Both the position numbers and the translations under genes were made by a program. The notes beneath the pieces are model-generated. The model saw only the letters and a list, made by a program, of their open reading frames with translations, did not search any database and was not told the origin of the DNA. Below are positions 2,403 to 47,847 of a stretch of DNA of 64,000 nt, in pieces (the stretch's first letter is position 1; every line of letters starts with the position of its first letter). Origin of the DNA: Caecitellus pseudoparvulus (lineage: Eukaryota; Protista; Bigyra: Bicosoecida); assembly GCA_965644315.1 (NCBI GenBank), contig CBFFRQ010000031.1, forward strand, positions 62,001-126,000, in the 5' to 3' direction.

Positions 2403-2823
2403 GGTGCACGGCTCCTTGACGCGCTTCGCTCAGGCACGCCCCTGAGATGGTGTGTTCAGGTCACCTTCTGTGTCGCACACACGCAGCACAGCAGAACAGG
2501 GCGCGGGTGGTCGCAGGCCCTGTGGAAGGCACAAGCGGGGGGGTGGGGGTGGGGTAGGTTTTGACAACGCAGCGGAGAGGATTCCAGGCACATACAGTTG
2601 CTGAGGCAAATTCCGCAAGCAAGTCACGCAGGATTGTGCCAGCGCACACAGCGCGAGCAATTGACAGCATGCGTACAGATCTGCCTAACCACAGGACATA
2701 ACTATCGTTACGATTGCGCCCCCCTGCTTGCACTGTCTGTTACATGCTTAACTAGGTCCTGCAGGCTGCCTTGTGTGTGGACTGGGCGTGCTCAGCTTGC
2801 TGCAGCTGCAGTGCACTTGCAGC

Positions 2824-4035
2824 ATGGACGCTGTGGGCGACGCTTTGCTCTACACGGGTGCAGCGCTGCTGGCCTGTGCGGCGGTACCCTTTGCGGTGTG
2901 GCTGTGGGCTCAGGTGCAGGGGGCTCGTTTGCAGGCACTCAGCAAGTCCGCGCTGGTGGAGGCGGGCAGCCCTGACGGCACACTGGTGCCAGGCGCGCCC
3001 ACGCCCCTCCCAGCCTTCCGCACGCCGGGAGGCACGCCCTTCCTCGCCTTCTCCCAGTACGAAGCCAACGTCTTATTGCATGAGATGTACCACGGCAGCA
3101 CTGAGTCCCGCGTGCACGCCACTGGCCTGCACCGCTGCGGCACACAGTCCCCACTGGTCGTGGACGTTGGCGCCAATGTGGGCACCTTCACGCTGTGGAT
3201 CAAGGAGCAGTTCCCCCGCGCCCGCGTGCTGTGTGTGGAGGCCCTCCCGCCCACTGCAGCGGTGTTGCGCTCCAATCTGGCCGCTGCAGGGCACTCAGAC
3301 GTGGTGGTGGTGCAGAGCGGGGCCGGGTCCAGCAGCAGCCCTGACGCGGTGTTCACCTTCTCCCCCGGCATGTCAGTGGGGGGGGCCTCCCTCAGCGGCC
3401 AGACATCCATGGATGCGGCTGCCGCCCACTCTGCAGCCACACCAGGCCTCCTCGCCACCCTGTCGGACGTAGCGGTGGATGTCCGCCGCACCTTCGCTGA
3501 GGTGGCCACTGCGCCAGCACCCACCCGGGCCCAGGCCAAGCCGGCCGAGCTGTACACGGTGCTGCAAGAGGACGGCAGTGTGGCGCCAGGCGCGGCAGCT
3601 GGGCGGCTCGGCGGCACGCTGCAGGAGCTGGGTCGGTGGGGCATGCTGGCAGGGCAGTTGCTGCCGCTGCTCCTCATCAAGCAGCAGCACCGAGTGCCCA
3701 TCGCCACACTGTCCTCCATCCTGCAGGAGCACGGCCATGCTGTGGGGTGCGGAGATGGGGACGTCATCGACTTCCTCAAAATCGACGTGGAGGGCGCTGA
3801 GTTGGAGGTGCTGGCGGGCATCGCGGAGCGTGACTGGCTGCGCACGCGGGGGGTCATGGTGGAGGTGCACGACGCCGACGGGGCGCTGGACACTGTTGTG
3901 GACACCCTGCACAGCCGTGGCTTCCACGTCAAAACTGCCCAAGAAGTGTGGCGGGTGCACACGCGCCTGGGCATCTACCTTGTGTACGGGACGCGGCCGG
4001 AGGGGTGGCAGCCCCCCCGCCCCCACACACAGTGA
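2824..4035 (+). CDS. FkbM-family SAM-dependent methyltransferase with N-terminal membrane anchor
   Basis: Motifs VVDVGANVG, VLCVEALP, IDFLKIDVEGAELEVL and VMVEVHD; hydrophobic N-terminal segment; no intron needed. Confidence 0.85.
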   Translation: MDAVGDALLYTGAALLACAAVPFAVWLWAQVQGARLQALSKSALVEAGSPDGTLVPGAPTPLPAFRTPGGTPFLAFSQYEANVLLHEMYHGSTESRVHATGLHRCGTQSPLVVDVGANVGTFTLWIKEQFPRARVLCVEALPPTAAVLRSNLAAAGHSDVVVVQSGAGSSSSPDAVFTFSPGMSVGGASLSGQTSMDAAAAHSAATPGLLATLSDVAVDVRRTFAEVATAPAPTRAQAKPAELYTVLQEDGSVAPGAAAGRLGGTLQELGRWGMLAGQLLPLLLIKQQHRVPIATLSSILQEHGHAVGCGDGDVIDFLKIDVEGAELEVLAGIAERDWLRTRGVMVEVHDADGALDTVVDTLHSRGFHVKTAQEVWRVHTRLGIYLVYGTRPEGWQPPRPHTQ

Positions 4036-34478: not shown

Positions 34479-34673
34479 GTTGCGGAAATTGATCTCTCGC
34501 CTTGTGCCCGTAAAGCTCAAACTGGCTTGCCCAGCAAAACCTTCACCGACGCGTAGCTTTTCGAACCATGACTTTTGTGTGTCCGGTGTACTCTGGGTGT
34601 GTCAAGTGTCTCGAGAAAGGTTGACAATCAGCTAGGGCCCCTTCCACTTCTGACGTCAGCGCGGCTCCGAGGT

Positions 34674-35777
34674 ATGGCTGCTTCCGCTCCTCAACGGAGC
34701 CTCCTCGTCGTCGGCACCGGGGTCACAGCAGCGCACTTGTGGAAGCGTTTGCGTGGCTTGTCTGCTAACCTTGCTGTCACTCTCGTTGACAAGGCACGTG
34801 GGCCAGGTGGCCGGTTTGCCTCGTCCAGATCCCGCAACTTATCTGGTCCATCCGGCCCCGCCCGACTGGACCTCGGCGCCCAGTACATCACAAGCGAGAG
34901 TGAAAGCGTCAGCGTGCTCGCAAAGGAAGGGCATTTGAATAACTTCACTGCTTCCCTGCATGGTCAGCACGCAAGCCAGAAGCAGCGGCAGAATTGGGTG
35001 GCCCCCGGCGGCATCGCAAGTGTAGTGACTGAACTGCTGCATGGCGCGTCTCCGCTGTACCAACACCACCTGACCCACCTGGACATTGTCGAAGATGCAA
35101 ATGGGCATCGTCGGTGGCAGGCTTCTTTCAAAGACCAGCAAGCGCTTCCCGCAGTGGATGCAGTCGTCCTAACCCTGCCCGCCCCCCAGCTGCTTCAGCT
35201 GGAAGGGGATGTTCAGCCTTTGCTGTCGAAGGCAGCACCGGGACTGTCAGAGGTCGCGTACTCCTCCAGATTCGCAGTGGGGCTGTGGTTCACACCGGAC
35301 CAAGCAAGTGCCGTGCAGGAGTGTATCGCCGGAGCCGGCATGTACGTACCTGCAGACCAGTCGGACATTGTGCGTTTCGTGTCCAACGACACGGTGAAGA
35401 GGGGCGTGAATTGCGAAGCAGAGGGGGGCATGTCCATCGTGGTGCACAGCACCGTGCAGTACGGTCATGCTCATCGAGAGGAAGCAAAAGACGATGGCTG
35501 CAAAGCCGTGCTGCAAGAGCTGCGCAGGCTCATGCCCACCCTGCCTGAGCCAGTCGAGGTCAAGCCACACAAGTGGAAGTTTAGCCAAGTCACCAAGGCA
35601 TACGCAGACGAGCACGGTCACACACCAAATGCTGTCCTGGTGAGCGAGCATCCGCTGCTTGTGTTGGCTGGTGATAGCTTTGCAAGCAGCAACTACGACG
35701 GCTGCGAAGCATCCGCCAGTGCCGCAGCGCGCCTGCTGGCTCCTGCGGACCTCAAGTCGCCCGAGGCAGAGGAATAG
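34674..35777 (+). CDS. Renalase-like FAD-dependent oxidoreductase
   Basis: Motifs LLVVGTG, DKARGPGGR, DLGAQY, AVVLTLPAPQ, YSSRFA, HKWKFSQV and AGDSF..SNYDGC. Confidence 0.85.
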   Translation: MAASAPQRSLLVVGTGVTAAHLWKRLRGLSANLAVTLVDKARGPGGRFASSRSRNLSGPSGPARLDLGAQYITSESESVSVLAKEGHLNNFTASLHGQHASQKQRQNWVAPGGIASVVTELLHGASPLYQHHLTHLDIVEDANGHRRWQASFKDQQALPAVDAVVLTLPAPQLLQLEGDVQPLLSKAAPGLSEVAYSSRFAVGLWFTPDQASAVQECIAGAGMYVPADQSDIVRFVSNDTVKRGVNCEAEGGMSIVVHSTVQYGHAHREEAKDDGCKAVLQELRRLMPTLPEPVEVKPHKWKFSQVTKAYADEHGHTPNAVLVSEHPLLVLAGDSFASSNYDGCEASASAAARLLAPADLKSPEAEE

Positions 35778-38700
35778 GCCATAAGGGCATGATCCGTTCT
35801 CCCCCACTTCCACTCAGCATGTTTTGGACGGCTTCCTGTGCCAGAGCGATGAGTGCAGCACCACGATCAGACGCACACCACGCGGAAAGCGCATCATGGG
35901 CGCTGGCCAGGTGCAAAAAGCTGGACCCGCGCCGCACGGCAGATGTCGCATTGGTCGCGTCATCCCAACGCATTTGAATGACGCCAAGACTAGCTTGGTA
36001 CCGCTGGTACTGCACATCCTTCACTGCTAAGACCGTACCTGGGCTGAGCAATGATGCCATGATTTTTCGCTGCCAGCGTCCGGCAGAGCAAAAGACTTCT
36101 ACGGACGCCACAGCTCCATGGTGATCCATGAGGAAAATGTGAAACGTGTGGCTCATCAAGCCGGAAGCCATTTGCCGCTCGTCGCCATCTGACACCGCCA
36201 GCACCACGCCGACTGTGTCGAGCACGCGAGGCCCAATGAACACAGACACGCTGTCGTCAAACGACGTGAACGAGCCACAAGCAGCGTGAGCAATGCTTGT
36301 GAACACTGTGGGTAAAACTGCACCTGCTGCGCCCTGAGCTGACCGCGCACTTTTCGGTGCACGGCCGTCCGACGCCGGGACCCACGAACAAGCACGGTCA
36401 GCAGACAGAGAAAACTCTGCCATAGGGGGCGTCAGAACTCTGACATGGACACAATCTTCATCATGCCCTTGTGGTCCAACTCCCACTACGTTCACAAATC
36501 TCACACTGAACGGGTCTTGGGGCTGTAGAATGGCCAAGTGGCATGGCCCGGGTGCCCTCGCTTGGCACTTCTCGAACAGCTCATCCAGACTGCAATGCAC
36601 CTCCAGGAGAAACGAGAACTCAGACTTCCATGGTGCAGCGAGACTGTACAGGCAATGCTGCGTGATCAAATCTGAGCTCATGTTCGCAGGCAGGGAGCGG
36701 AGCCCGAGTGGAGGCACCATTGGCTTCCTCGCAGCGACCGACAACCCGCTGACGAAATACCGCTCACCAGCGCGAAAGCCCGCGATGGACTCTTCCCCGG
36801 CTCCCCACATTGATACACTCACAAGCTTCTTCTCCCCACCCGCGCGCTTGCGAGGAACAGACACGAGCGGATCACATCGCCATTCGCAGCAAGGCAACCC
36901 CTGTGTCCTGCACATGACCAGGAAAGGACTCCGCGGGCCTTCACAAACAAACCTCTCAGGGCATTCCTCAGACTGAACAGCAACCATTCGCTGCCTGCGA
37001 ACTTTTGCAACGATAGCTGCCGAGGCACTCTGCCTCGCTGATCGCACAACTCGGCGTCGTACGGGCACGCTGGCAGGAGTCCTGGGAGCAGCAGGGACGG
37101 GATCAGTGTCAACCGTGTCTGTCGCCTTCCCTGCATCGATTCTCTGGCCACAGGCTAGCAATACTCCGTCGCCCTCACCCCCCTCGCCCAGCACACTCGC
37201 TGCTCGCGCCTTCGCTGACTCGCTCACCACCAACGGCTTGTTCCGGCCCGTCACGAACCCCGTGCTCCCTCCGCCCCCCTCACCCCCCTCGCCCAGCACA
37301 CTCGCTGCTCGCGCCTTCGCTGACTCGCTCACCACCAACGGCTTGTTCCGGCCCGTCACGAACCCCGTGCTCCCTCCGCCCCCCTCACCCCCCTCGCCCA
37401 GCACACTCGCTGCTCGCGCCTTCGCTGACTCGCTCACCACCAACGGCTTGTTCCGGCCCGTCACGAACCCCGTGCTCCCTCCGCCGCCCTCACCCCCCTC
37501 GCCCAGCACACTCGCTGCTCGCGCCTTCGCTGACTCGCTCACCACCAACGGCTTGTTCCGGCCCGTCACGAACCCCGTGCTCCCTCCGCCCCCCTCGCCC
37601 CCCTCGCCCAGCACACTCGCTGCTCGCGCCTTCGCTGACTCGCTCACCACCAACGGCTTGTTCCGGCCCGTCACAAACCCCGTGCTCCCTCCGCCGCCCT
37701 CACCCCCCTCGCCCAGCACACTCGCTGCTCGCGCCTTCGCTGACTCGCTCACCACCAACGGCTTGTTCCGGCCCGTCACGAACCCCGTGCTCCCTCCGCC
37801 GCCCTCGCCCCCCTCGCCCAGCACACTCGCTGCTCGCGCCTTCGCTGACTCGCTCACCACCAACGGCTTGTTCCGGCCCGTCACGAACCCCGTGCTCCCT
37901 CCGCCCCCCTCGCCCCCCTCGCCCAGCACACTCGCTGCTCGCGCCTTCGCTGACTCGCTCACCACCAACGGCTTGTTCCGGCCCGTCACGAACCCCGTGC
38001 TCCCTCCGCCCCCCTCACCCCCCTCGCCCAGCACACTCGCTGCTCGCGCCTTCGCTGACTCGCTCACCACCAACGGCTTGTTCCGGCCCGTCACGAACCC
38101 CGTGCTCCCTCCGCCGCCCTCACCCCCCTCGCCCAGCACACTCGCTGCTCGCGCCTTCGCTGACTCGCTCACCACCAACGGCTTGTTCCGGCCCGTCACG
38201 AACCCCGTGCTCCCTCCGCCCCCCTCGCCCCCCTCGCCCAGCACACTCGCTGCTCGCGCCTTCGCTGACTCGCTCACCACCAACGGCTTGTTCCGGCCCG
38301 TCACGAACCCCGTGCTCCCTCCGCCCCCCTCACCCCCCTCGCCCAGCACACTCGCTGCTCGCGCCTTCGCTGACTCGCTCACCACCAACGGCTTGTTCCG
38401 GCCCGTCACAAACCCCGTGCTCCCTCCGCCCCCCTCGCCCCCCTCGCCCAGCACACTCGCTGCTCGCGCCTTCGCTGACTCGCTCACCACCAACGGCTTG
38501 TTCCGGCCCGTCACGAACCCCGTGCTCCCTCCGCCCCCCTCGCCCCCCTCGCCCAGCACACTCGCTGCTCGCGCCTTCGCTGACTCGCTCACCACCAACG
38601 GCTTGTTCCGGCCCGTCACGAACCCCGTGCTCCCTCCGCCCCCCTCGCCCCCCTCGCCCAGCACACTCGCTGCTCGCGCCTTCGCTGACTCGCTCACCAC

Positions 38701-41700
38701 CAACGGCTTGTTCCGGCCCGTCACGAACCCCGTGCTCCCTCCGCCGCCCTCGCCCCCCTCGCCCAGCACACTTGCTGCTCGCGCCTTCGCTGACTCGCTC
38801 ACCACCAACGGCTTGTTCCGGCCCGTCACGAACCCCGTGCTCTCTCTGCCCCCCTCACCCCCCTCAGCCCCAGCCTGTGCAACAAACCTGCTCATCACAG
38901 GTGATTCCCTAGCGCGCAGGCTGGTTTCAGTCGTCGAAGCTGGGAGGAAGGCCTGTGTTTGAGAAGCACCGGCTCGGAGCTGCTGCTGCGCTGTCTCGGG
39001 CGTCTCCTCACGCTGAGTGGGCTCCTCCACTGGCACATCTCTGTAGGATGGCGGTGTGAACGCGAGAGGCGCGTCTAAACTCTTGGTCTCGGGGAACGCG
39101 GGCCACTCGGGTGGTGCTTCGTGCAATACCATGGTTGCGAATGGCTTGCCGCTGGAAGACGGGTCAGAAGACATGGCCTGAATGGCTGCCGACATGCGAT
39201 CTGCTTGGTCTGCTTGCAGTGATTCCAGGCTCTGTGCGGGCACACACCCACTCTGCCTGGCTCGCGCTAATTGTACTTGAACATTATCCCGCTCACGGGC
39301 AAACTCCACTTGCAACTGCTGAACCAGAGCAGATGCTCGCTCACGGGCTTTGTCCTGCTCAAGCCGGTGCACTGCAGCTGCAACTGCGCTGGACACCGCC
39401 ACGACACGGGGCTTGTCGCCTTCAGCTTGGTCTGGACGATGCCCAGAGCCGTCGTCGCTCCCCGCCAACACTGAGGCAGGGAGCAGTACTTTGCAGCCGC
39501 TGACTCGCTGCACGGCCAGACTGAGTTGGGGTGCAGACCCACCCCCTTGGCGCAAAGATCGCAGCTGCACTGTGAACGTCCGTGCATGCTGGTGGCCCAA
39601 GCGCTTGTGCCACACAGCTCGGCGAGTGCCGTTGAATCGCAAGAGCAACACTGCACTGCCAAGTTTCTGTGGCGCCACCATTCCTCGACCACGCATGAGC
39701 CCTGGCGAGAGCGGGAAGCGCCAATGCCTTGTGGCCTTGGCTTGCCTTGGGCTCGCACTGGCGCTGCTCAAGGTACACATGCGGTCCGATGCAGTCTGGG
39801 TCCAGTCCCACCCAAGGTACACCGCATTGCACACAGTCTCCAGCGGGTCCATGCCGTCGTCCATGGGCCGCAAGCCAGACACTGGAGTCCATGATGGGGT
39901 ATCTGCGGGGTCCAAGAGCACTGTGCCCCTTGAGTACAGCTCGGCGCCGCACACTGCCAACTTGAGCCCTGGGAAGATCTTGCCCCGGCGAACTTGTTCT
40001 GCAAGCAAGTCGTCCACGGCACACTCGACGCTGTACCAGCCATCTGACACTTCCAACCGGATGGAGTCAGATGCGGCAGCACCAGCACTCCCACTGCCAC
40101 TGCTAGACGTGGAGACCACTTGTGCCACCACCAGCACCATGTACCGTGCAGGTGACTCGTCCTTCTCCAGAACCCGCCTCAGAGCGCTGCGTGAGCCCTG
40201 TGTGTACTCACGCTCGTAACGATGCCACAGTTGTTGGAGCACGGTGTCCCAGTCAAGCAGCACTGTGTCGCTGCCGGCGGGCGCCACTTGGACCCTTCCG
40301 TCTGCACCATGTCGCAAGCTGCCTGACAGCTGCGCCCCCTGCAGGCGGCTGCCACAGCGCTCGTAGGAGGCAAGCTTCCAGATGATCCACCGGTAGTGGT
40401 TCGCGACCCAAGCGGGAGAAACGCCAGCTGGTACCGCACCCCACTCCAGCAGTGTTGCCCGAGCATGGTCAGGGCCGCGCAGGGTGTCTGGCAGGCGGGT
40501 GTTGGGCTTGGCCACCGCCAGCGCGCCATCAGCACCGAACGCAACCCAGGCTGCCGAGGCAGCATCAATGCTCCAGAGGAATTCAAGCCGCATGGCAACT
40601 TGGGATGACTCCGTCCGCTCAGCGCTGGGAGCCAGCACGATCTTGCCCTGCGCCACCAAGCTCCGCACCCGAGCACCTCCCTCGCCCCCGCCCCCAACCA
40701 CCACGGTTGGCTGGCGAGCCAGAGACACGAGCGGCGCTGTCAGGGCGGGGGTAAGGTACCTCTCCACACGCTGTCGCTTGCGGGAGGAACCGGCCTGACT
40801 GCCTGGTGTGGTGCGGTGTGGGTTGGGAGTGGCCGAGAGTGGAGCCGTCGCCCGAGGCAACGGACGGGGTGTCACGAACTTGCGCGTGCGAGCTCGCTTG
40901 GAGGGATTCGGTGTCGCCGCTGATTCTGTCAGGGTTGCAGAGCTGTCTGCCTCGCCAGGTCCAGGTGTGTGGGGGGCGGGCACAGGCTCGTCAGCCGCAC
41001 CAAGTGCGCCGGGGGCAGGGAGCGTGCTGGGAAGGACAGGGGCAGCAAACGAGACGCTCTTGCGCCGCCGTTGCCGAGCACGAGCAGAGAGCCTGGAGAT
41101 CTGTGGGCTGAAGGGGCCCTCTGTGCCCGGAGTGGCGCCTGCAGTGTCCCCAGCTCGCAAGCTGATGCTGTCACCGCCTTGGGACTGCGAGTCCCCCTGG
41201 GAGTACATGAAGGCAGGGCCGGCGTCAGGGGCCTCGGAGACGATGTCTGAGGCAACGCTCTGATGATCGGCCACAAGGGGCAACATGGGCGTGACCGTGT
41301 GGGGGTCCCCCAAGGACACGCGTCGGCCAGGCCGTGTCGGCTGCCCTGGCGTGGCCAGCTGTGGCGACGCCGAGCCGTCCGAGGCAGGGGATGCCGGAGC
41401 ATCTGCTTGCATGAGAATGCGTGAAGCTGTTGCCCTGCTTGACTCCGAAGGGACGACAGGCACGTCATGTCCCGTGCGGAATCCGGAAAATGCCGGAGCC
41501 TGACCACTGTCCACGCCGCTCACAGCGTCTGCACCAGGAGAAGCGTCGGAGGCTTGCGAACTGCGGCTCTCCCGACCCTCAAGAGGTTGGTGTGACCCCT
41601 CCTCACTTTGAGAAGAGTTCGAATGGGGCGGCACGTCGTCCACTGCACCTGGCCCATCCTGTGACAGCACGCCAGCTTCTGGAGCTTGTGCTTGAAACGC

Positions 41701-41970
41701 CGGTGAAACGGCAGGCAAAACTTGGGCAGCTGGAGGCTCCTCATGGTCGGCCTCCAGGCTGGTCTGTGCTGCATCTTCGGGTTGAGAGTGTGTAACTTCG
41801 TCACTTACTCGCACGCTTGCGAGCTGGCCAGGCCCACACTGCGCAGAGTTGGCCTCTGAGCCGCGTTCAAATTCTTGCTGCGCAGGTACTGCGCTCCACG
41901 CAGCAAAGAGCCTTGCGATGCTCTGGTCCGACCCCAGGTAGACTTGGGCCTGCGGCTCGTGAGCAGACAT
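35752..41970 (-). CDS. BRCA2: BRCA2 homolog with 1 N-terminal and 16 intra-DBD BRC repeats
   Basis: Helical domain WVANHYRWIIWKLASYE (about 40360-40410). OB1 QLWHRYERE..SRSALRRVLEKD, LEVSDGWY and FNGTRRAVWHKRLG. OB2 start LRSLRQGGG..AVQRV; OB2 remainder VSMWG..GFRAGERYFVSGL (about 36750-36820). OB3 LDTVGVVLAV. First genuine ATG at 41970. Confidence 0.93.
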   Translation of the reverse strand: MSAHEPQAQVYLGSDQSIARLFAAWSAVPAQQEFERGSEANSAQCGPGQLASVRVSDEVTHSQPEDAAQTSLEADHEEPPAAQVLPAVSPAFQAQAPEAGVLSQDGPGAVDDVPPHSNSSQSEEGSHQPLEGRESRSSQASDASPGADAVSGVDSGQAPAFSGFRTGHDVPVVPSESSRATASRILMQADAPASPASDGSASPQLATPGQPTRPGRRVSLGDPHTVTPMLPLVADHQSVASDIVSEAPDAGPAFMYSQGDSQSQGGDSISLRAGDTAGATPGTEGPFSPQISRLSARARQRRRKSVSFAAPVLPSTLPAPGALGAADEPVPAPHTPGPGEADSSATLTESAATPNPSKRARTRKFVTPRPLPRATAPLSATPNPHRTTPGSQAGSSRKRQRVERYLTPALTAPLVSLARQPTVVVGGGGEGGARVRSLVAQGKIVLAPSAERTESSQVAMRLEFLWSIDAASAAWVAFGADGALAVAKPNTRLPDTLRGPDHARATLLEWGAVPAGVSPAWVANHYRWIIWKLASYERCGSRLQGAQLSGSLRHGADGRVQVAPAGSDTVLLDWDTVLQQLWHRYEREYTQGSRSALRRVLEKDESPARYMVLVVAQVVSTSSSGSGSAGAAASDSIRLEVSDGWYSVECAVDDLLAEQVRRGKIFPGLKLAVCGAELYSRGTVLLDPADTPSWTPVSGLRPMDDGMDPLETVCNAVYLGWDWTQTASDRMCTLSSASASPRQAKATRHWRFPLSPGLMRGRGMVAPQKLGSAVLLLRFNGTRRAVWHKRLGHQHARTFTVQLRSLRQGGGSAPQLSLAVQRVSGCKVLLPASVLAGSDDGSGHRPDQAEGDKPRVVAVSSAVAAAVHRLEQDKARERASALVQQLQVEFARERDNVQVQLARARQSGCVPAQSLESLQADQADRMSAAIQAMSSDPSSSGKPFATMVLHEAPPEWPAFPETKSLDAPLAFTPPSYRDVPVEEPTQREETPETAQQQLRAGASQTQAFLPASTTETSLRARESPVMSRFVAQAGAEGGEGGRESTGFVTGRNKPLVVSESAKARAASVLGEGGEGGGGSTGFVTGRNKPLVVSESAKARAASVLGEGGEGGGGSTGFVTGRNKPLVVSESAKARAASVLGEGGEGGGGSTGFVTGRNKPLVVSESAKARAASVLGEGGEGGGGSTGFVTGRNKPLVVSESAKARAASVLGEGGEGGGGSTGFVTGRNKPLVVSESAKARAASVLGEGGEGGGGSTGFVTGRNKPLVVSESAKARAASVLGEGGEGGGGSTGFVTGRNKPLVVSESAKARAASVLGEGGEGGGGSTGFVTGRNKPLVVSESAKARAASVLGEGGEGGGGSTGFVTGRNKPLVVSESAKARAASVLGEGGEGGGGSTGFVTGRNKPLVVSESAKARAASVLGEGGEGGGGSTGFVTGRNKPLVVSESAKARAASVLGEGGEGGGGSTGFVTGRNKPLVVSESAKARAASVLGEGGEGGGGSTGFVTGRNKPLVVSESAKARAASVLGEGGEGGGGSTGFVTGRNKPLVVSESAKARAASVLGEGGEGGGGSTGFVTGRNKPLVVSESAKARAASVLGEGGEGDGVLLACGQRIDAGKATDTVDTDPVPAAPRTPASVPVRRRVVRSARQSASAAIVAKVRRQRMVAVQSEECPERFVCEGPRSPFLVMCRTQGLPCCEWRCDPLVSVPRKRAGGEKKLVSVSMWGAGEESIAGFRAGERYFVSGLSVAARKPMVPPLGLRSLPANMSSDLITQHCLYSLAAPWKSEFSFLLEVHCSLDELFEKCQARAPGPCHLAILQPQDPFSVRFVNVVGVGPQGHDEDCVHVRVLTPPMAEFSLSADRACSWVPASDGRAPKSARSAQGAAGAVLPTVFTSIAHAACGSFTSFDDSVSVFIGPRVLDTVGVVLAVSDGDERQMASGLMSHTFHIFLMDHHGAVASVEVFCSAGRWQRKIMASLLSPGTVLAVKDVQYQRYQASLGVIQMRWDDATNATSAVRRGSSFLHLASAHDALSAWCASDRGAALIALAQEAVQNMLSGSGGERIMPLWPIPLPRAT
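37170..38865 (-). repeat. Tandem array of 16 x 105-bp units encoding BRC repeats (STGFVTGRNKPLVVSESAKARAASVLGEGGEGGGG)
   Basis: An anchor recurs every 105 nt from 37191 to 38766 (16 copies). The unit aligns without gaps to the human BRC4 core [26 protein letters not shown]. Confidence 0.95.
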
Positions 41971-42177
41971 GATACTGCTACAGCCTGTGCATGTGCCCCG
42001 CCTTAGCTTGTGCGCAGAGAATATCAGCGCGCCGTGGAGCTTGTGGCGCGCCTCAGCGCTGGAACGTGGCGCAATCGCGCGTGTCTTCAGGCCAAAGCAG
42101 ACACTACACTGGAGGGAGCGAAAGAAGGAAGTGTAGAGACACATGTATTGGGTGGGAAATTTGTTTGTGCCTACGCC

Positions 42178-43143
42178 TCAGCATGGCGCTGAGCCCGCTG
42201 CCTCCACCGACACCTCCAACGCAGGCGACACAGCGTCCAAGCCAGCCAGCACCAGCGCCTCTTCGATGGAGGCAGCTGAACGCGATGCCTGGTAGGCAGC
42301 AGCTGCTGCGCAAGCTGCGCGTTGCAGTGGTGTCTCTTCTTCATCGAGGGCCTGGCGAGTCACGATGATGAGGCGCAGCCGACGCGCCACAGCCTGCTGG
42401 GCCCAAGCGTTGGACACTTCGTACACCTGCATGGCCAAGCCAGCGCCGCAGCGACGCTCAAGCAGCTGCAGGAGCTTGTCTGCAGCAGGACGACCAGGGT
42501 CCACGATGATGGCGCAGGCCCCTGGAGACATGAGGCCGATCACGGCGTCTGCAAGGTGTGGCACGTGGCCCGCGGCGTAGCACACGTCCGAGCCCAGCAC
42601 CAGGTCCACTTGCTCAGTCGCAGCCAGCGCTGGACCATCTGCCCAGTCCAACACTTGATATGATACAGGGGGGTGTATCGATCCCTGAGTGCAGCTGTAG
42701 TGGGCAGCCGTGGCTGCGTCACTGACAACGTCCGACGCAACGGACACGGCGCCACATGCGGCTGCGACCACTGCAGGCAGCGCACAGCCAGCTCCCACTT
42801 CGTGCACGGACACGCCCTTGAGGGCAGTGTGCATGTGCAGCAGCAGCTCACAGAGGAAAACATTGCTCACCCACACGTGCGCCCAGAGTGCCATGGACAC
42901 AGCAGAGGCATGGGAATACTCGCTGCTTGCAGATGAAGCGCTGGAGCCAGGCCGGGCCACATCGGCGTCGGCAGCGACAGCCTCAGCAGCGCCTAGGCGC
43001 CCGACATCAAAGTAGTGCGGGTCAAGAATGCATCCGAATGTGAATGTCTTGCTCTTGTGCTCCTCCTCTGAGCCCGCCCTTGGAGCGGTCAAAGTCAGGG
43101 AAAAGCAGCCCAGCTCCGGGGCTGCGGAAATTGCCTGGGCCAT
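42178..43143 (-). CDS. Seven-beta-strand protein methyltransferase (Methyltransf_16, METTL21/23-like); start uncertain
   Basis: Motifs LWAHVW...FLCELL, VHEVGAGCALP, LDW and DLVLGSDVCY. Confidence 0.8.
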   Translation of the reverse strand: MAQAISAAPELGCFSLTLTAPRAGSEEEHKSKTFTFGCILDPHYFDVGRLGAAEAVAADADVARPGSSASSASSEYSHASAVSMALWAHVWVSNVFLCELLLHMHTALKGVSVHEVGAGCALPAVVAAACGAVSVASDVVSDAATAAHYSCTQGSIHPPVSYQVLDWADGPALAATEQVDLVLGSDVCYAAGHVPHLADAVIGLMSPGACAIIVDPGRPAADKLLQLLERRCGAGLAMQVYEVSNAWAQQAVARRLRLIIVTRQALDEEETPLQRAACAAAAAYQASRSAASIEEALVLAGLDAVSPALEVSVEAAGSAPC

Positions 43144-43272
43144 GAAGGCTGCAAGGTTGGCACGCTGCCCAGCCAGCAGTGGTGCCAGGAGGCCACAGCC
43201 AGGGTGGAGGCTTGGTGGCTCCCAGATGTTGGGAAAGTGTGCCGGGCGCGATGCATTGCCTCGCTGTCGGCC

Positions 43273-44936
43273 CTACTCCAGGGCACTCATAGGGCGGTCA
43301 TGCTTCATGCCCTTGCGATAGTCAAGCCAGCAGCGCTTGACCACCAGCTCAATCTTCTCCAGAGCCGTGTCCAGCACCTCACGTGTATGCCCAGCAGAGA
43401 TGCAGAAGCGCACGCGGGACTTGAGAAGGGGTGTGGCCGGGAAGCCCACAACAACGACAGCCACACCCAGCGCCATCAACGCCCGTGACATGGCCACGTT
43501 CTTGCACGGGTCAAAGAGCATGACAGGGATGACAGGGGAGTCTGTGTGCCCATACACGTCACAGCCCATGTCGATCAAGCGCTTGCGGAAGTAGTTGGCG
43601 TTGTCCTTGATGGCCTGCAGCTTGGCCGCGCCCAGCCCCGAGCCATCCCGCCCCGAGATGATGTCGAAGGAGCGCAGCACCTGAGCAGTCACGCTGGGCG
43701 CCATGGCGGGCGTGTACACGCTGCCACTGGCGTTGTGGCGCAGGTAGTCGATGAACTCCTTGCTGGCGGCGATGTACCCCCCCATGGCGCCGAAGCTCTT
43801 GGTGAAGGTGCCCATCATGACGTCCACATCCCCCGGGTCCACGCCGAAGTGCTCACACACGCCGCGGCCGGTCTTGCCCACGGCGCCGATGCTGTGGGCC
43901 TCGTCCAGGTAGATGTACGCCTTGTACTTCTTGGCGACGCTGACGATGGCGGGGAGGTTCACCATCTCCCCCTCCATGCTGTACACGCCCTCCACCACCA
44001 CTACAATCTTCTTCCACGGGCGGCGAGTGCGGGGCTGGCCGTCCACCAGGGCTGTGCGCAAGATGCCCTCCAGGGTCTTGATGTCGTTGTGGCCGAAGAC
44101 TCGCACGACGGCCCCGCTGGCGCGAGCCCCGTTCACAATGCTGGTGTGGTTCAGCGCATCCGACACGATCAGGGTGCCTTTGCCCATGAGCGCAGGCAGG
44201 GCCGTCGCGTTGGTGCCGTAGCCCATGTTGAAGACGATGGCATCAGGCTTCCCCACGAACTCAGCCACGGTCCGCTCCAGGCGGCGGTGCAGGGTCGTGT
44301 AGGCACCCTCAGCAATGGATGCCGCCATGCCCACTCCGAAGCGGTCCACGGTGCTCACGACGGCGTCTCGGCAGGTGGCTCGCCAATCGTCAGCGAAACC
44401 AAGGTAGTTATAGCTGCCAAGATTGATGCAGGGGCGGGACTTGCCACTTGGCCTGCGCCTCGTGCGGGAGGAGCGACTGTGCGCTGGGGCAAACTCGCAC
44501 CATTCCCAGCTTCACGCACCTCAGCGAAAAGTTCCCATCATAGCTCACACGCTCAGCAACCTGCATGCGGTTTGCTCCAGGTGGGCCGGTAATGGGGCGG
44601 TTAAAGCAGTCTTGCGCGCGATGGTACATGCGGCGAGTGAAGAAGTTCTCCCAGTCATTCAGCAGAGGTGCGTATCCCTGAGTGCGGAAATAGGCGATCT
44701 GGTGGCTCACAGTAAACCTGTCACCGTGCCGTCCTGTGAGCACCGGCATCGACAGAACATAAAGTTGTCGGCACACCTACCTTCTGGGGTGAAGAGTTGC
44801 CACCCAAGTAGCGTGAGTACCCAGTCGTGCGGGCGAAGAAGTCGCGCATCTGGCCGAAGAGCATCAACACAGAGTACGCGAAGTACGTCGTGAGGGCAGA
44901 GAACCAGGGGATCTCGTCAAAGTCACTGTGTCCCAT
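43273..44936 (-). CDS. LCB2: Serine palmitoyltransferase catalytic subunit LCB2/SPTLC2
   Basis: Three coding exons: TYFAYSVLMLFGQMRDFF; YAPLLNDWENFFTRRMY..DCFNRPI; and SDALNHTSI, EGVYSMEG, DEAHSIG with the PLP-lysine motif GTFTKSFG. Confidence 0.95.
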
Positions 44937-45162
44937 CTTGATGTTGTTGTGGTACTATCTGGAGAGGAGGGCACTCTGCGCAAGGGGAGAGCGGATGTGC
45001 CACGTTCATGCTGTGCTTGGCTGGTGCAGCGGCAGTTTGGGGCAGCACTCAACGTACCTGGAGCGAAAGCCAGAAGATGCGGCTAAGACACGGACGCGAA
45101 GCGCGACAATGGATTGAATGGTGAAAACGATTGTGGTGCGGAAACTGGGCAGGTGCTGTGAG

Positions 45163-47847
45163 CTACCGTGTCCACCGCTGGACCATGGCTGTGAGGTCAA
45201 CGCCACCTACAATGACGTGGGGCACTTCACTGGCACTACCTCGTGCAGGGGGCTCGCCAGGAGGAGGCCCCAGGTGCAACGGAGACCTGGTCATGAAAGA
45301 GCTCTGTGGTCTTTCGCTTTGCGCCCTGGCAAGCTGTAGGGCCGCAGGTGACACCTGCGACGCTGCGCGCCACGAGGCTGAAGACCGCAGGGGCGCCCGC
45401 TGCGAACGGCCATGTGACAGAGCCCAACTCTGCAGGGGTGTCAGGCGGGCAGGGCTCGGTCGAACGTAGCTGGTCGAAGCCGGCACACGCATGCCCGGGC
45501 TTGGCTGGGCATGTGGCGCACGTGAGGCGTTGGCAGCACTGTAGACATGCGCAGGGTTGGACGTGGAGGCCGGCGATGGCGCGAAGGAGACGGCAGGGGC
45601 ATGCTGTGGGCGAGGAGCAGATCGCTGCACTGGTGGCGCGTGCGACCGTGGTGGCCCCAGCGCCTGTTCTCGTGCTTCATGTACCGGCCCTCGGCCAGCC
45701 AGCTCCGCCTGCAGCCGAGCACGGCGCCGCCTGACCTGCTGCAACTGTGCCTGCAGGGCACGCAGTGACTTGTGCCGGTATGCACCCAACAAAGCAGCTT
45801 GGCCCATGTGACGTGGAACTCCCGGCGAATTCTGCATGGAGTGTGCAGCAGGGCCCTCGTGCCCGGCCGGCTGAAGACCGGCTGCACCGTAGTCTGGGGT
45901 GCTGTGGACACGTGACACGCCTGAGCCGGACACCGGAAGCGAGAGTGGTGGCACTGGTGCTGCAGCTGGGTTTCGTTGATGCGTTGAGGGGTCGCCTCCT
46001 GCACGGGTGGGGAAAGTCTGGAACGGCAAGACATCATCCAAGTCACTCCCCGCCCTCCCACTGCCCCCGCCCACATCGCCCACATCACCCACACCGCCTG
46101 CCTCACCGTCCCCCTCCTCGCCACTCCCCGCCCTCCCACTGCCCCCGCCCACATCGCCCACACCACCCGCCTCACCGTCCCCCTCCTCGCCACTCCCCGC
46201 TCTCCCACTGCCCCCGCCCACATCGCCCACACCGCCCGCCTCACCGTCCCCTTCCTCGCCACTCCCCGCTCTCCCACTGCCCCCGCCCACATCGCCCACA
46301 CCCCCCGCCTCACCGTCCCCCTCCTCGCCACTCCCCGCCCTCCCACTGCCCCCGCCCACATCGCCCACGCCGCCCGCCTCACCGTCCCCCTCCTCGCCAC
46401 TCCCCGCCCTCCCACTGCCCCCGCCCACATCGCCCACACCACCCGCCACACCGTCCCCCTCCTCGCCAATCCGATCCCTCCCACTGCCCCCGCCCACATC
46501 GCCCACACCGCCTGCCTCACCGTCCCCCTCCTCGCCACTCCCCGCTCTCCCACTGCCCCCGCCCACATCGCCCACACCGCCTGCCTCACCGTCCCCCTCC
46601 TCGCCACTCCCCGCCCTCCCACTGCCCCCGCCCACATCGCCCACACCGGCCGCAACTCCGTCCTCCTCCTCGCCACTCCCCGCCCTCCCACTGCCCCCGC
46701 CCACATCGCCCACACCCCCCGCCTCACCGGCCCCCACCTCGCCACTCCCCGCCCTCCCACTGCCCCCGCCCACATCGCCCACGCCGCCCGCCTCACCGTC
46801 CCCCTCCTCGCCACTCCCCGCCCTCCCACTGCCCCCCCCCACAACGCCCACACCGCCCGCCTCACCGGCCCCCTCCTCGCCACTCCCCGCCCTCCCACTG
46901 CCCCCGCCCACATCGCCCACACCGCCCGCCTCACCGACCCCCTCCTCGCCACTCCCTTCACCCACCCCCTGACTCTCAGCAGCCTGAGAAGTTTCTGCCT
47001 CCCCCAGCAGTGCCAGAAGACTAGTCCGCTGTGCCTCTGGGGTCAAGTGCAGCAAGGCCGGCTGAGCATATCGGGCTGTCTGAGGGGACTGCACCCATGC
47101 AGCCCGTGCGCTGCGTTGGCCATCCGCCACTGGACCTCCGAAGGCGTCGGCCACAGCCAGCATGCCCTCCACTGCCTGGATGCAGGCACGAGTTGATGCC
47201 TCCACTTCGTGCAGAGCCTGCTGGGGGCTGGACCCGGCAGCTGGAGGCGGGCCTCGCAACAGCACCGGAGCCATGACAGTCGCTATAGCCTCAGGACCCA
47301 TGTGGTTGACCTCCTCTACTGTCGTGACATGGCGAAGGTGGTGCAGCAGGGCGGTCAGCGTCCAGCGAGCTGCTGGCTGCAGCTCTGCCAGAAGCCATGC
47401 CGCCTCCTCCTCGCCAGAGGCACCCTCAACTCCTTTCAGAGGCTCAAAACGGGAGCACGCTTGCGCAGTGCAGGCCAGGGGCACTAGTGGTTCGAGCAGG
47501 GCGAGCGAACGCTTGAAAGCCGACGCCAACACCTCAGGTGTTGCGCAGTGAGCGAGCCGCATGAAGGCGTCACCTTCCCCACCAAGCGCCGCATCCACCA
47601 ATGCCGAGACATCTTCTTGTCTCCCTGACGAACGGTAGATAAACTCGGTCTGCACGCCGCTTTGTCGGTCCTCGAGAAGGCAAAGAAACAACAGGAGCCG
47701 CTCGGCAATCTGACAGGTCAGAGGCGGCTTGGGGGAGTCTTCGACAGGCTCAGGGTTCCCTTGCGCAGTACCACCACCCAGCCTCTCGTCAGTACTTGAG
47801 GAGCTTGACTTTCCTGCTCCTTTTGCCTTGGAGTTGCGGCCACCCAT
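45163..47847 (-). CDS. RhoGAP-domain protein, probably N-myristoylated, with Gly/Glu tandem repeat
   Basis: MGGRNS fits MGxxxS. Arginine finger [30 protein letters not shown] and [17 protein letters not shown]. Confidence 0.82.
46044..46960 (-). repeat. Coding minisatellite, 13 x 69 bp ([23 protein letters not shown])
   Basis: Anchor at 46044, 46122, then every 69 nt to 46950. One unit has a 9-nt internal duplication. Strong G/C strand asymmetry. Confidence 0.95.

What the first reader, a model, noticed from the sequence alone, without database searches (positions are those of the whole stretch)
36750..41490. BRCA2 with its RAD51-binding BRC array inserted inside the DNA-binding domain (OB2)
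Seen in sequence: the protein order is one divergent BRC (GFRTGHDVPVVPSESSRATASRIL, about 41410-41490), helical domain, OB1, first OB2 strands, a tower-like helical region (about 39170-39400), a post-tower strand (KPFATMVL), a roughly 760-aa insert holding 16 tandem 35-aa BRC repeats, the rest of OB2 (VSMWG..RAGERYFVSGL), then OB3. Established: in the characterised BRCA2 proteins I know (human, Arabidopsis, Ustilago Brh2, and the tandem-expanded Trypanosoma brucei protein), BRC repeats lie N-terminal to the DBD. The unit keeps both BRC modules: FxTG in place of FxxA (as in plant BRCs) and VLGE in place of LFDE. Inference: a high-valency RAD51/DMC1-loading arm emerging from an OB2 loop next to bound ssDNA would be a different recombination-mediator architecture, possibly reflecting high demand for homologous recombination.
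Basis: partly seen in the sequence, partly recalled or inferred. Interest (0 to 1): 0.85.

Follow-up and report, generated by a model that had tools for sequence, protein, structure and literature searches.

The report
BRCA2 with BRC array inside OB2
This marine protist's only BRCA2 gene carries sixteen identical copies of the RAD51-binding BRC motif inside a loop of its DNA-binding domain, not ahead of that domain as in every other BRCA2 compared here, so it is a natural test of whether motif position matters.

Summary
One uninterrupted 2130-aa ORF (35752-42144, minus strand) encodes, in order:
- one N-terminal BRC
- the helical domain and OB1
- OB2 strand 1
- a two-helix tower
- 16 tandem 35-aa BRC units, identical as protein (37164-38870)
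- OB2 strands 3-5
- OB3

A 110-sequence BRCA2 profile hits both sides of the array in collinear order. In an AlphaFold model of a one-repeat version, a single OB fold forms from segments on both sides of the array, and the model matches the mouse BRCA2 DBD at Z 17.

Both junctions recur in three read sets (one may be the window's own sample) and in an ENA metagenome scaffold. Unit depth indicates many copies. Among 108 other BRCA2 homologues with recognisable BRCs, none has a BRC downstream of the helical domain.

Not settled:
- Which segment is OB2 strand 2. The best guess is VMSRFVAQA, just before the array.
- Whether the array is in the mRNA. RNA evidence is weak.
- Whether the units bind RAD51.

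Verdict: a new architectural variant of a known protein. It most likely works as an ordinary but looped, high-valency RAD51/DMC1 loader. Earlier notes from this scan on the same stretch covered only the repeat's synonymous variation and its G-runs.

The parts
35752..42144 (-). BRCA2 coding ORF, 2130 aa plus stop. The true start is probably M59 at 41970.
   Evidence: It is the only BRCA2 OB1 match in the 30.6-Mb genome.
41407..41484 (-). N-terminal BRC repeat (aa 221-246, GFRTGHDVPVVPSESSRATASRILMQ), in the canonical position
   Evidence: 12 of 26 residues identical to the array unit. BLOSUM62 score 58 against a shuffle maximum of 40. No Pfam hit on its own.
39934..40569 (-). Helical domain and OB1 (aa 526-737)
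   Evidence: Pfam PF09169 and PF09103. PDB 1iyj, 1miu and 1mje, E 1e-26. HMM 193 bits.
39658..39921 (-). Lineage-specific insertion of about 88 aa in OB1 (aa 742-829)
   Evidence: Gap in all homologues in alignment A1. pLDDT below 50.
39502..39657 (-). End of OB1, linker and OB2 strand 1 (aa 830-881, ..GGSAPQLSLAVQRV)
   Evidence: HMM 42 bits, E 5e-15. Matches rat BRCA2 chain positions 370-420. Strand in both models.
39163..39429 (-). Tower-like helical hairpin (aa 906-994): one helix of about 60 residues and one of about 24. No three-helix bundle recognised.
   Evidence: AlphaFold helices 91-150 and 155-178 of model 2, pLDDT 57-78, and the same in model 1. No Pfam Tower hit.
38871..39162 (-). 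Proline-rich disordered linker 1 (aa 995-1091). It holds KPFATMVL (39124-39147) and the best strand-2 candidate VMSRFVAQA (38872-38898).
   Evidence: pLDDT about 30, except the strand at model 2 residues 269-276, pLDDT about 65. That strand follows the MAFFT alignment. dN/dS against the sister strain is 0.11.
37164..38870 (-). Sixteen tandem 105-bp / 35-aa BRC units (GFVTGRNKPLVVSESAKARAASVLGE plus a Gly/Glu spacer)
   Evidence: TRF. Units compared. Pfam PF00634 single unit E 0.0087, 15.9 bits. My own BRC HMM 14 bits per unit, i-E 2.5e-4. Junctions and multi-copy depth seen in other samples.
36841..37163 (-). Linker 2 (aa 1661-1768). It has an Arg-rich stretch (aa 1695-1724) and the alternative strand-2 candidate PRSPFLVMCRTQGL (36895-36936).
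   Evidence: Disordered in both models. dN/dS 0.18. No significant strand-2 match.
36721..36840 (-). OB2 strand 3, helix and strand 4 (aa 1769-1808, LVSVSMWGAGEESIAGFRAGERYFVSGLSVA)
   Evidence: hhalign P 4.5e-4. HMM positions 483-522. Strands at pLDDT 71-78.
36430..36720 (-). Second lineage-specific insertion of about 97 aa in OB2, between strands 4 and 5 (aa 1809-1905)
   Evidence: Gap in homologues. Low-confidence helices and strands.
36379..36420 (-). OB2 strand 5 region (aa 1909-1922, AEFSLSADRACSWV)
   Evidence: Aligned with the homologues' LxLTxxRxTRW. Strands at pLDDT 70-78.
35809..36222 (-). OB3 and the C-terminal helices (aa 1975-2112)
   Evidence: HMM E 1.3e-7. Matches P0011, which has Pfam OB3, and P0009. 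pLDDT 85-93. RPA-type OB folds at Z 10-11.

Best explanation
This is the organism's single BRCA2 orthologue. It keeps one BRC repeat in the usual N-terminal position and carries a second, amplified set of 16 identical BRC units inside OB2 of the DNA-binding domain. The array lies after OB2 strand 1 and the tower hairpin and before OB2 strands 3-5 and OB3.

Shown:
- The array and its two disordered linkers form a loop of about 680-760 residues.
- In the model, OB2 closes around this loop.
- The most likely position is the strand 2-3 loop, with VMSRFVAQA as strand 2 (about 55%). The alternative is the strand 1-2 loop, which already holds the tower (about 35%).

Inferred mechanism:
- Each unit binds one RAD51 or DMC1 monomer through FVTG (the FxxA module) and VLGE (the LFDE module).
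- The loop therefore carries up to 16 recombinase monomers, tethered at both ends to the ssDNA-binding OB2-OB3 module, and hands them to ssDNA as canonical BRCA2 does.

Inferred origin: a copy of the N-terminal BRC landed in a length-tolerant OB2 loop. It was later amplified and is kept uniform by unequal recombination or replication slippage.
For: Architecture:
- collinear helical, OB1, OB2 strand 1, [array], OB2 strands 3-4, OB3.
- OB2 strands 3-4 lie after the array, P 4.5e-4.
- the C-terminus is homologous to proteins with Pfam OB3.
- model 1 matches 1iyj_B at Z 20.6, model residues 34-1110 to chain 2467-3116.
- model 2 matches 1miu_A at Z 17.0, rmsd 5.4 A over 285 residues. Single OB folds (8aa9_B, 3u4v_A, 1o7i_A; Z 10.2-11.7, rmsd 2.6-3.0 A, 106-111 residues) span model residues about 40-606, across the array.

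BRC identity:
- PF00634 is the only Pfam hit of a single unit, E 0.0087.
- 14 bits against an HMM built from 534 BRCs of other species.
- both tetrads at the canonical 17-residue spacing, and strong paralogy with the N-terminal BRC.

Real, not an assembly artefact:
- contigs from three read sets (one, X1, may be the window's own sample) run from each flank into the array. Unit unitig depth is about 10x the flanks in X6. No joint skips the array.
- an ENA metagenome scaffold of a 98%-identical strain has the same in-frame junctions.

Coding:
- only synonymous differences among units.
- dN/dS is 0.11 and 0.18 in the two linkers, about 0.2 gene-wide.

Partners in the genome: RAD51, a DMC1-like gene and DSS1 are present, and there is only one BRCA2.
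Against:
- A single unit is below Pfam's gathering score. The 117-bit whole-protein score is one weak match counted 16 times.
- Position 6 of the Lo et al. consensus Fx[ST][AG]xG is N (array unit) or D (N-terminal copy), not G.
- OB2 strand 2 cannot be found by sequence. The strand in model 2 follows the MAFFT alignment, so it is not independent.
- Both models have low overall confidence: mean pLDDT 56 and 51, from alignments of 14-16 sequences.
- RNA evidence is one 274-nt contig across the array/linker-2 junction, from a library labelled metatranscriptomic that the tool flags as probably DNA.
- The copy number rests on one assembly. Short-read contigs break in the array, and the ENA scaffold collapses it to one unit.
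Confidence: 0.75

Rival explanations
1. Same protein, different topology. The array sits in the strand 1-2 loop with the tower, for example at or after the tower tip. Under this reading an Arg-rich post-array helix (aa 1695-1724) is the descending tower helix, and PRSPFLVMCRTQGL (aa 1737-1750) is strand 2.
For: - The ascending helix has about 60 residues but the return helix before the array has only about 24.
- The 64-sequence MAFFT alignment puts SLESLQADQADRMSAAIQ..DPSSSGKPFATMVL against the tower-tip three-helix bundle of homologues.
- SPFL matches the TPF[ML] core of the strand-2 consensus RDVTPFMRVRVVGL.
- The strand 1-2 loop already tolerates 65-190-aa towers.
Against: - The post-array region is disordered, pLDDT 23-35, in both models. 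No helix or strand is predicted there.
- When homologues' strand 2 was aligned to the post-array Arg-rich stretch, AlphaFold built nothing there. When it was aligned to VMSRFVAQA, it built a strand at pLDDT about 65.
- All strand-2 scores are below chance level.
Confidence: 0.3
2. The array is genomic but is removed from the mature mRNA, always or in a major isoform. The working protein would then have an ordinary OB2 and a single N-terminal BRC.
For: - The genome has introns, according to other unchecked notes.
- No run clearly on record as RNA holds the gene.
Against: - The frame stays open through 1.7 kb of array and about 600 bp of linkers.
- All differences among units are synonymous.
- The unit keeps both BRC modules and is a paralogue of the N-terminal BRC.
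- Linker dN/dS is 0.11-0.18.
- A contig from a metatranscriptomic library crosses the array/linker-2 junction unspliced.
- No joint skips the array in four runs.
Confidence: 0.07
3. The repeat is a Gly/Glu-rich coding minisatellite that resembles BRC by chance or has lost function. It would be a tolerated disordered loop expansion, like the other insertions in this protein, and would bind no recombinase.
For: - A single unit is below Pfam's cut-off.
- The G of FxTAxG is replaced.
- The protein also has large lineage-specific insertions in OB1 and between OB2 strands 4 and 5.
- Another Gly/Glu minisatellite lies nearby, according to an unchecked note.
Against: - PF00634 is the only Pfam family a single unit hits, E 0.0087 across the whole library.
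- 14 bits over positions 2-31 of 33 in an independent BRC HMM.
- Both tetrads at the exact canonical spacing, and strong similarity to the N-terminal BRC of the same protein.
- Protein-level identity is maintained over 16 units despite DNA variation.
Confidence: 0.1
4. Assembly artefact: the array belongs elsewhere, or its copy number is inflated.
For: - Near-identical 105-bp units cannot be spanned by short reads.
- Logan contigs stop inside the array.
- The ENA scaffold shows one unit.
Against: - Both flank-to-array junctions are identical in X1, X3, X6 and the ENA scaffold, and in frame.
- Unit unitig depth is 370 against 33-37 for the flanks in X6, and 69 against 18 in X3.
- There is no second BRCA2 locus in the genome.
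Confidence: 0.04

Closest known systems
Canonical BRCA2 DNA/DSS1-binding domain (mouse and rat structures 1MIU, 1IYJ, 1MJE; Yang et al. 2002)
   Same: Helical domain, OB1, OB2 with a helical tower inserted after strand 1, and OB3, in the same order. E 1e-26 by sequence and Z 17-21 by model. A DSS1 gene is present.
   Different: - The BRC array and about 200 aa of linkers lie inside OB2.
- The tower is reduced to a two-helix hairpin with no recognisable three-helix bundle.
- There are extra insertions of about 90 aa in OB1 and between OB2 strands 4 and 5.
Trypanosoma brucei BRCA2 (Hartley and McCulloch 2008, PMC2408642; Trenaman et al. 2013, PMC3553974)
   Same: A recent tandem expansion to about 12-15 virtually identical BRC units, apparently kept uniform by expansion and contraction. 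Unicellular organism.
   Different: - The T. brucei array lies N-terminal to the DBD and its units are 44 aa.
- There the expansion was discussed in the context of VSG switching. Here the host is a marine protist (free-living per other, unchecked notes of this scan) and the array is inside OB2.
High-BRC-number protist BRCA2s (Trichomonas vaginalis P0130, Anaeramoeba flamelloides P0105)
   Same: 14-16 BRC matches per protein with the same HMM.
   Different: Their BRCs are diverged and dispersed, and all lie upstream of the helical domain.
Engineered BRC-RPA70 fusions (cited in PMC2408642 and PMC3240595)
   Same: They show that BRC repeats work when simply tethered to an ssDNA-binding OB module, so position is flexible. 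That makes a working intra-OB2 array plausible.
   Different: They are artificial, tethered at one end only, and have few repeats.
Non-canonical BRCA2s lacking the DBD (Drosophila, moss; PMC12412785)
   Same: Further examples of BRCA2 architecture being reshaped in particular lineages.
   Different: Those lost the DBD. This one keeps a complete DBD and relocates the BRCs into it.

Membership tests
BRCA2 | BRCA2 helical domain | tested here: met
   PF09169, 30.6-33.6 bits, above the cut-off of 25. NHYRWIIWKLA motif aligned to rat BRCA2.
BRCA2 | OB1 | tested here: met
   PF09103, 92.6-96.8 bits. HMM 193 bits together with the helical domain.
BRCA2 | OB2 (five-stranded OB fold following OB1) | tested here: met
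   Strand 1 by HMM and PDB match. Strands 3-4 by hhalign, P 4.5e-4. In model 2 a whole OB fold superposes on RPA and Teb1 OB domains, Z 10-12 at 2.6-3.0 A. Strand 2 is not assignable by sequence.
BRCA2 | [quoted passage not shown] | tested here: inconclusive
   A helical hairpin of about 60 and about 24 residues is predicted at the right place. There is no PF09121 hit and no clear three-helix bundle.
BRCA2 | OB3 | tested here: met
   HMM E 1.3e-7. Transitive Pfam OB3 through P0011. Confident OB fold at pLDDT 85-93. No direct Pfam hit.
BRCA2 | DSS1 partner encoded in the genome | tested here: met
   PF05160, 40.2 bits, above the cut-off of 32.2. Binding was not tested.
BRC repeat (PF00634) | Pfam gathering score for a repeat | tested here: not met
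   A single unit scores 15.9 bits against a cut-off of 20.3, E 0.0087, and it is the only family hit. The whole protein scores 117 bits only because one match is summed 16 times.
BRC repeat (PF00634) | FxxA module, Fx[ST][AG] (Lo et al. 2003, as quoted in PMC10684384) | tested here: met
   FVTG in the array unit and FRTG in the N-terminal copy. The following xG of the stricter consensus is RN or HD, so that part is not met.
BRC repeat (PF00634) | Second hydrophobic tetrad, two hydrophobic residues then x[DEQ], 17 residues after FxxA (Rajendra and Venkitaraman 2010, as quoted in PMC10684384) | tested here: met
   VLGE (array unit) and ILMQ (N-terminal copy) at exactly that spacing.
BRC repeat (PF00634) | Binds RAD51 and/or DMC1 | not testable with these tools
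   RAD51 and DMC1-like genes exist in the genome. No complex prediction or assay is available here.

The most novel reading that the evidence does not exclude
The intra-OB2 position is functional, not merely tolerated. Because the 16-unit loop is anchored at both ends to the barrel that grips ssDNA, DNA binding by OB2-OB3 and recombinase loading or release by the array would be mechanically coupled. For example, ssDNA engagement could open the loop and release RAD51 or DMC1 directly onto the bound strand. That would be a mediator design distinct from the N-terminal 'fishing line' of all characterised BRCA2s.
Probability: 0.2. Interest if true: 0.8.

Novelty: new variant of a known kind. Interest (0 to 1): 0.58.

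Why it matters
In every characterised BRCA2 the RAD51-binding repeats lie upstream of the DNA-binding domain, and models of RAD51 loading assume that layout. A natural protein with the repeats threaded through an OB2 loop shows that this order is not obligatory, and it gives a ready-made construct for asking whether the geometry between BRCs and the DBD matters.

It is also a second, independent case of a recent expansion to about 16 identical BRC units, this time in a marine protist with no known antigenic variation. That bears on why T. brucei expanded its array. For annotation, it warns that domain-order rules and short-read assemblies can misdescribe such genes: the ENA scaffold collapsed the array to one unit.

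Tried and rejected
- **Pfam and PDB searches of the C-terminal 469 aa alone:** no hit. This was resolved later with a family HMM and transitive hits.
- **Exact-product look-up of the 2130-aa protein:** not on record.
- **The search for homologous proteins with this protein:** only 3-6 distant hits, because low-complexity words dominate. Re-querying with the Amorphochlora DBD gave 159 hits.
- **Locating OB2 strand 2:** an ungapped PSSM from 110 homologues gave a best score of 8.4 bits at an unrelated site, below the 95th percentile of shuffles at 10.8. A 20-column HMM gave nothing above -3.8 bits. hhalign of the pre-array segment gave nothing. KPFATMVL was therefore rejected as a supported strand.
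- **AlphaFold with the 64-sequence alignment A3:** I did not send those rows to any other remote tool. I folded instead with rows already accepted or not flagged (A4). The models therefore rest on shallow alignments.
not built or folded, because the tools take unaltered sequences only. The natural one-unit product P0012 was used instead.
- **Relatives in JGI metagenome contigs:** the alignment was too diverged to search with. The single protein found none.
- **Pfam Con-6 hit (61 bits):** rejected as an artefact of summing a weak match over identical units.
- **The 618-aa ORF on the plus strand (37106-38962):** the stop-free antisense of the repeat, not a gene.
- **Organism:** could not be named. 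Other notes call it a marine stramenopile, which I did not check.

Full report
**What is there**

The finding lies in one uninterrupted ORF on the minus strand, 35752-42144, 2130 aa. Tandem Repeats Finder reports a single array at 37164-38870, with period 105 bp, 16.2 copies and 98% matches. When cut into units, the 16 copies are identical as protein except for the spacer of the first. Their DNA differs at only three positions, all synonymous. The 618-aa ORF on the opposite strand (37106-38962) is only the stop-free antisense of this G+C-rich repeat.

**Is it BRCA2, and in what order?**

- Pfam finds the BRCA2 helical domain (aa 561-596), OB1 (653-739) and BRC repeats (from aa 1100).
- The pre-array part matches the rat and mouse BRCA2 DBD chains 1iyj, 1miu and 1mje at E 1e-26. 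The match includes the segment that holds OB2 strand 1 and the first tower helix.
- The 469 aa after the array hit nothing in Pfam or the PDB on their own.
- A HMMER scan of 1.8 billion representative proteins linked aa about 1970-2113 to fragments that carry Pfam OB3 (P0011) or the end of OB1 plus OB2 (P0009).
- I built an HMM from the DBDs of 110 BRCA2 homologues, without this protein. It hits the ORF four times in collinear order: aa 526-737 (193 bits), 830-881 (42 bits, OB2 strand 1), 1769-1808 (OB2 strand 3-helix-strand 4, weak, i-E 0.08) and 1975-2112 (OB3, E 1.3e-7).
- A profile of OB2 from seven homologues aligns to GEKKLVSVSMWGAGEESIAGFRAGERYFVSGLSVAARK with P 4.5e-4.

The array (aa 1092-1660) therefore lies between OB2 strand 1 and OB2 strand 3.

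**Structure prediction**

I used P0012 instead. This is the product of an ENA metagenome scaffold from a 98%-identical strain, in which the array is assembled as one unit.

- Model 1 (aa 494-1619, alignment of 14 sequences, mean pLDDT 56) is confident for the helical domain, OB1 and OB3. It matches 1iyj_B at Z 20.6, with model residues 34-1110 aligned to chain residues 2467-3116.
- Model 2 (aa 830-1619, alignment of 16 sequences, mean pLDDT 51) matches 1miu_A at Z 17.0, rmsd 5.4 A over 285 residues.
- In model 2, single OB domains superpose on model residues about 40-606. These are Rpa1 8aa9_B, Teb1 3u4v_A and SSB 1o7i_A, at Z 10.2-11.7, rmsd 2.6-3.0 A and 106-111 residues. In other words, one barrel is built from segments on both sides of the tower and the BRC. 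This is the 'OB2 reforms' test, and it passes.
- Caveat: both models are of low overall confidence.

**Are the units BRC repeats?**

The 117-bit Pfam score of the whole protein is one weak match counted 16 times. The spurious 61-bit Con-6 hit shows the same effect. Taken alone, the evidence for one unit is:

- It scores 15.9 bits, E 0.0087. This is below Pfam's cut-off of 20.3, but PF00634 is the only family it hits.
- Against an HMM I built from 534 BRC motifs of other species, each unit scores 14 bits over positions 2-31 of 33 (i-E 2.5e-4).
- The unit has FVTG as the FxxA module and VLGE exactly 17 residues later as the second tetrad. The motif definitions are those quoted in PMC10684384.
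- The glycine of the stricter FxTAxG consensus is replaced.
- The N-terminal motif at aa 221-246 (FRTG ... ILMQ) is a clear paralogue of the unit: 12 of 26 residues identical, score 58 against a maximum of 40 in 2000 shuffles.

The protein therefore has one BRC in the ancestral position and 16 inside OB2.

**Is the locus real and coding?**

- Contigs from three read sets (one, X1, may be the sample the window was assembled from) run from each flank into the array and stop there, as expected for a tandem repeat. No joint skips it.
- The unit unitig has about 10 times the depth of the flanks in X6 (370 against 33-37), and 69 against 18 in X3.
- The ENA scaffold has the same in-frame junctions.
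- dN/dS between the two strains is about 0.2 gene-wide, and 0.11 and 0.18 in the two linkers. The counts are small.
- A 274-nt contig from a library labelled metatranscriptomic crosses the array/linker-2 junction. The tool flags that run as probably DNA, so expression of the array is not shown.
- The genome (30.6 Mb) has only this one BRCA2. It also has a RAD51 gene, a DMC1-like gene, RAD51 paralogues and DSS1.

**Where exactly in OB2?**

The consensus of strand 2 in 110 homologues is RDVTPFMRVRVVGL. Nothing in this protein matches it above chance.

In the large alignment it falls opposite the tower tip of homologues.
- Model 2 builds a strand at VMSRFVAQA (aa 1083-1091, pLDDT about 65), directly before the first unit. 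However, MAFFT had aligned the homologues' strand 2 to that segment, so the support is not independent.
- The alternative is that strand 2 is PRSPFLVMCRTQGL after the array, which would place the array in the tower loop. It remains open.
- My estimate is about 55% for the strand 2-3 loop and about 35% for the tower loop.
- The claim that the loop emerges 'next to bound ssDNA' is therefore not established.

**How unusual is it?**

With the same BRC HMM, 117 other homologues have a median of 4 BRCs and a maximum of 16 (Anaeramoeba). The set covers plants, insects, chytrids, a sponge, Trichomonas, Anaeramoeba, the chlorarachniophyte Amorphochlora and unnamed metagenomic proteins. In all 108 homologues that have both BRCs and the helical-domain anchor, the last BRC lies at least 123 residues upstream of that anchor. 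Only this protein and its strain variant have BRCs downstream of OB1.

P0009, one of the nearest fragments by OB3 similarity, has a short ordinary strand 2-3 loop. The insertion is thus probably lineage-specific. The sample is thin for this organism's own lineage, and no closer relatives were found.

The literature searched describes BRCs as central or N-terminal to the DBD. It singles out T. brucei for a tandem array of up to 15 near-identical units (PMC2408642). I found no report of BRCs inside the DBD. This is absence of evidence in an open-access library only.

**Mechanism**

- Shown: a complete BRCA2 DBD, interrupted in OB2 by a disordered loop of about 680-760 residues made of 16 BRC-type units with Gly/Glu spacers.
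- Inferred from the established role of BRC repeats: each unit holds one RAD51 or DMC1 monomer, and the array delivers them to ssDNA held by OB2-OB3. Engineered BRC-RPA fusions work, so BRC position is known to be flexible. I therefore expect ordinary mediator function with high valency and a loop tethered at both ends.
- A more novel possibility is coupling between DNA binding and recombinase release (about 20%).
- Origin: a copy of the N-terminal BRC inserted into a length-tolerant loop. This DBD also carries insertions of about 90 aa in OB1 and between OB2 strands 4 and 5. The copy was then amplified and homogenised recently. Fifteen G-quadruplex-type motifs on the coding strand may promote slippage.

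**Verdict**

This is a new architectural variant of a known protein, of moderate to high interest.

Noticed in passing
window 39658-39921 and 36430-36720: Besides the array, the DBD carries two further lineage-specific insertions of about 90-97 aa. One is in OB1 (aa 742-829). The other is between OB2 strands 4 and 5 (aa 1809-1905), and it contains a strand-2-like stretch DPFSVRFVNVVGV. Both are absent from all homologues aligned.
   Followed up: partly
window 37164-38870, minus strand: There are 15 non-overlapping G-quadruplex-type motifs (four runs of three or more G) on the coding strand of the array, about one per unit. They may favour replication slippage and copy-number change.
   Followed up: partly
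window 35752-35777: The 3' end of the BRCA2 ORF overlaps by 26 nt the 3' end of the convergent ORF 34575-35777 (NAD(P)-binding Rossmann-like protein). The same neighbour is called in the ENA scaffold.
   Followed up: partly
window 41970-42178: The ORF's first ATG (42144) lies 34 nt from the stop of the upstream same-strand lysine methyltransferase gene (42178-43143). The first 58 codons look non-native, so M59 (MSAHEPQ, 41970) is the more likely start.
   Followed up: no
window 37106-38962, plus strand: A 618-aa ORF antisense to the array is an artefact of the stop-free repeat. The Pfam Con-6 hit (61 bits) and the 117-bit BRCA2-repeat score are inflated by summing one weak match over identical units.
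   Followed up: yes
L003/L004 (G000:C66:291575-292310) and L002 (G000:C53:404587-405243): The RAD51 orthologue (best PDB matches RAD51, 232-234 bits) is split into two matches with one in-frame TGA. This could be an intron or a frameshift. The intact 366-aa gene on C53 matches DMC1 slightly better than RAD51 (323 against 305-312 bits), which hints at a meiotic toolkit.
   Followed up: partly
L008 (ENA ERZ23499060 scaffold_665, 38490-46349): A metagenome scaffold of a 98%-identical strain collapses the 16-unit array to one unit with no run of N. The public gene model (1619 aa) is therefore about 510 aa too short.
   Followed up: yes
window 39124-39147 and 36895-36936: Two similar short hydrophobic stretches flank the array: KPFATMVL before it and SPFLVMCR after it. 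Both share the PF of the strand-2 consensus. This could be a vestige of a duplicated strand 2 from the insertion event, or chance.
   Followed up: no
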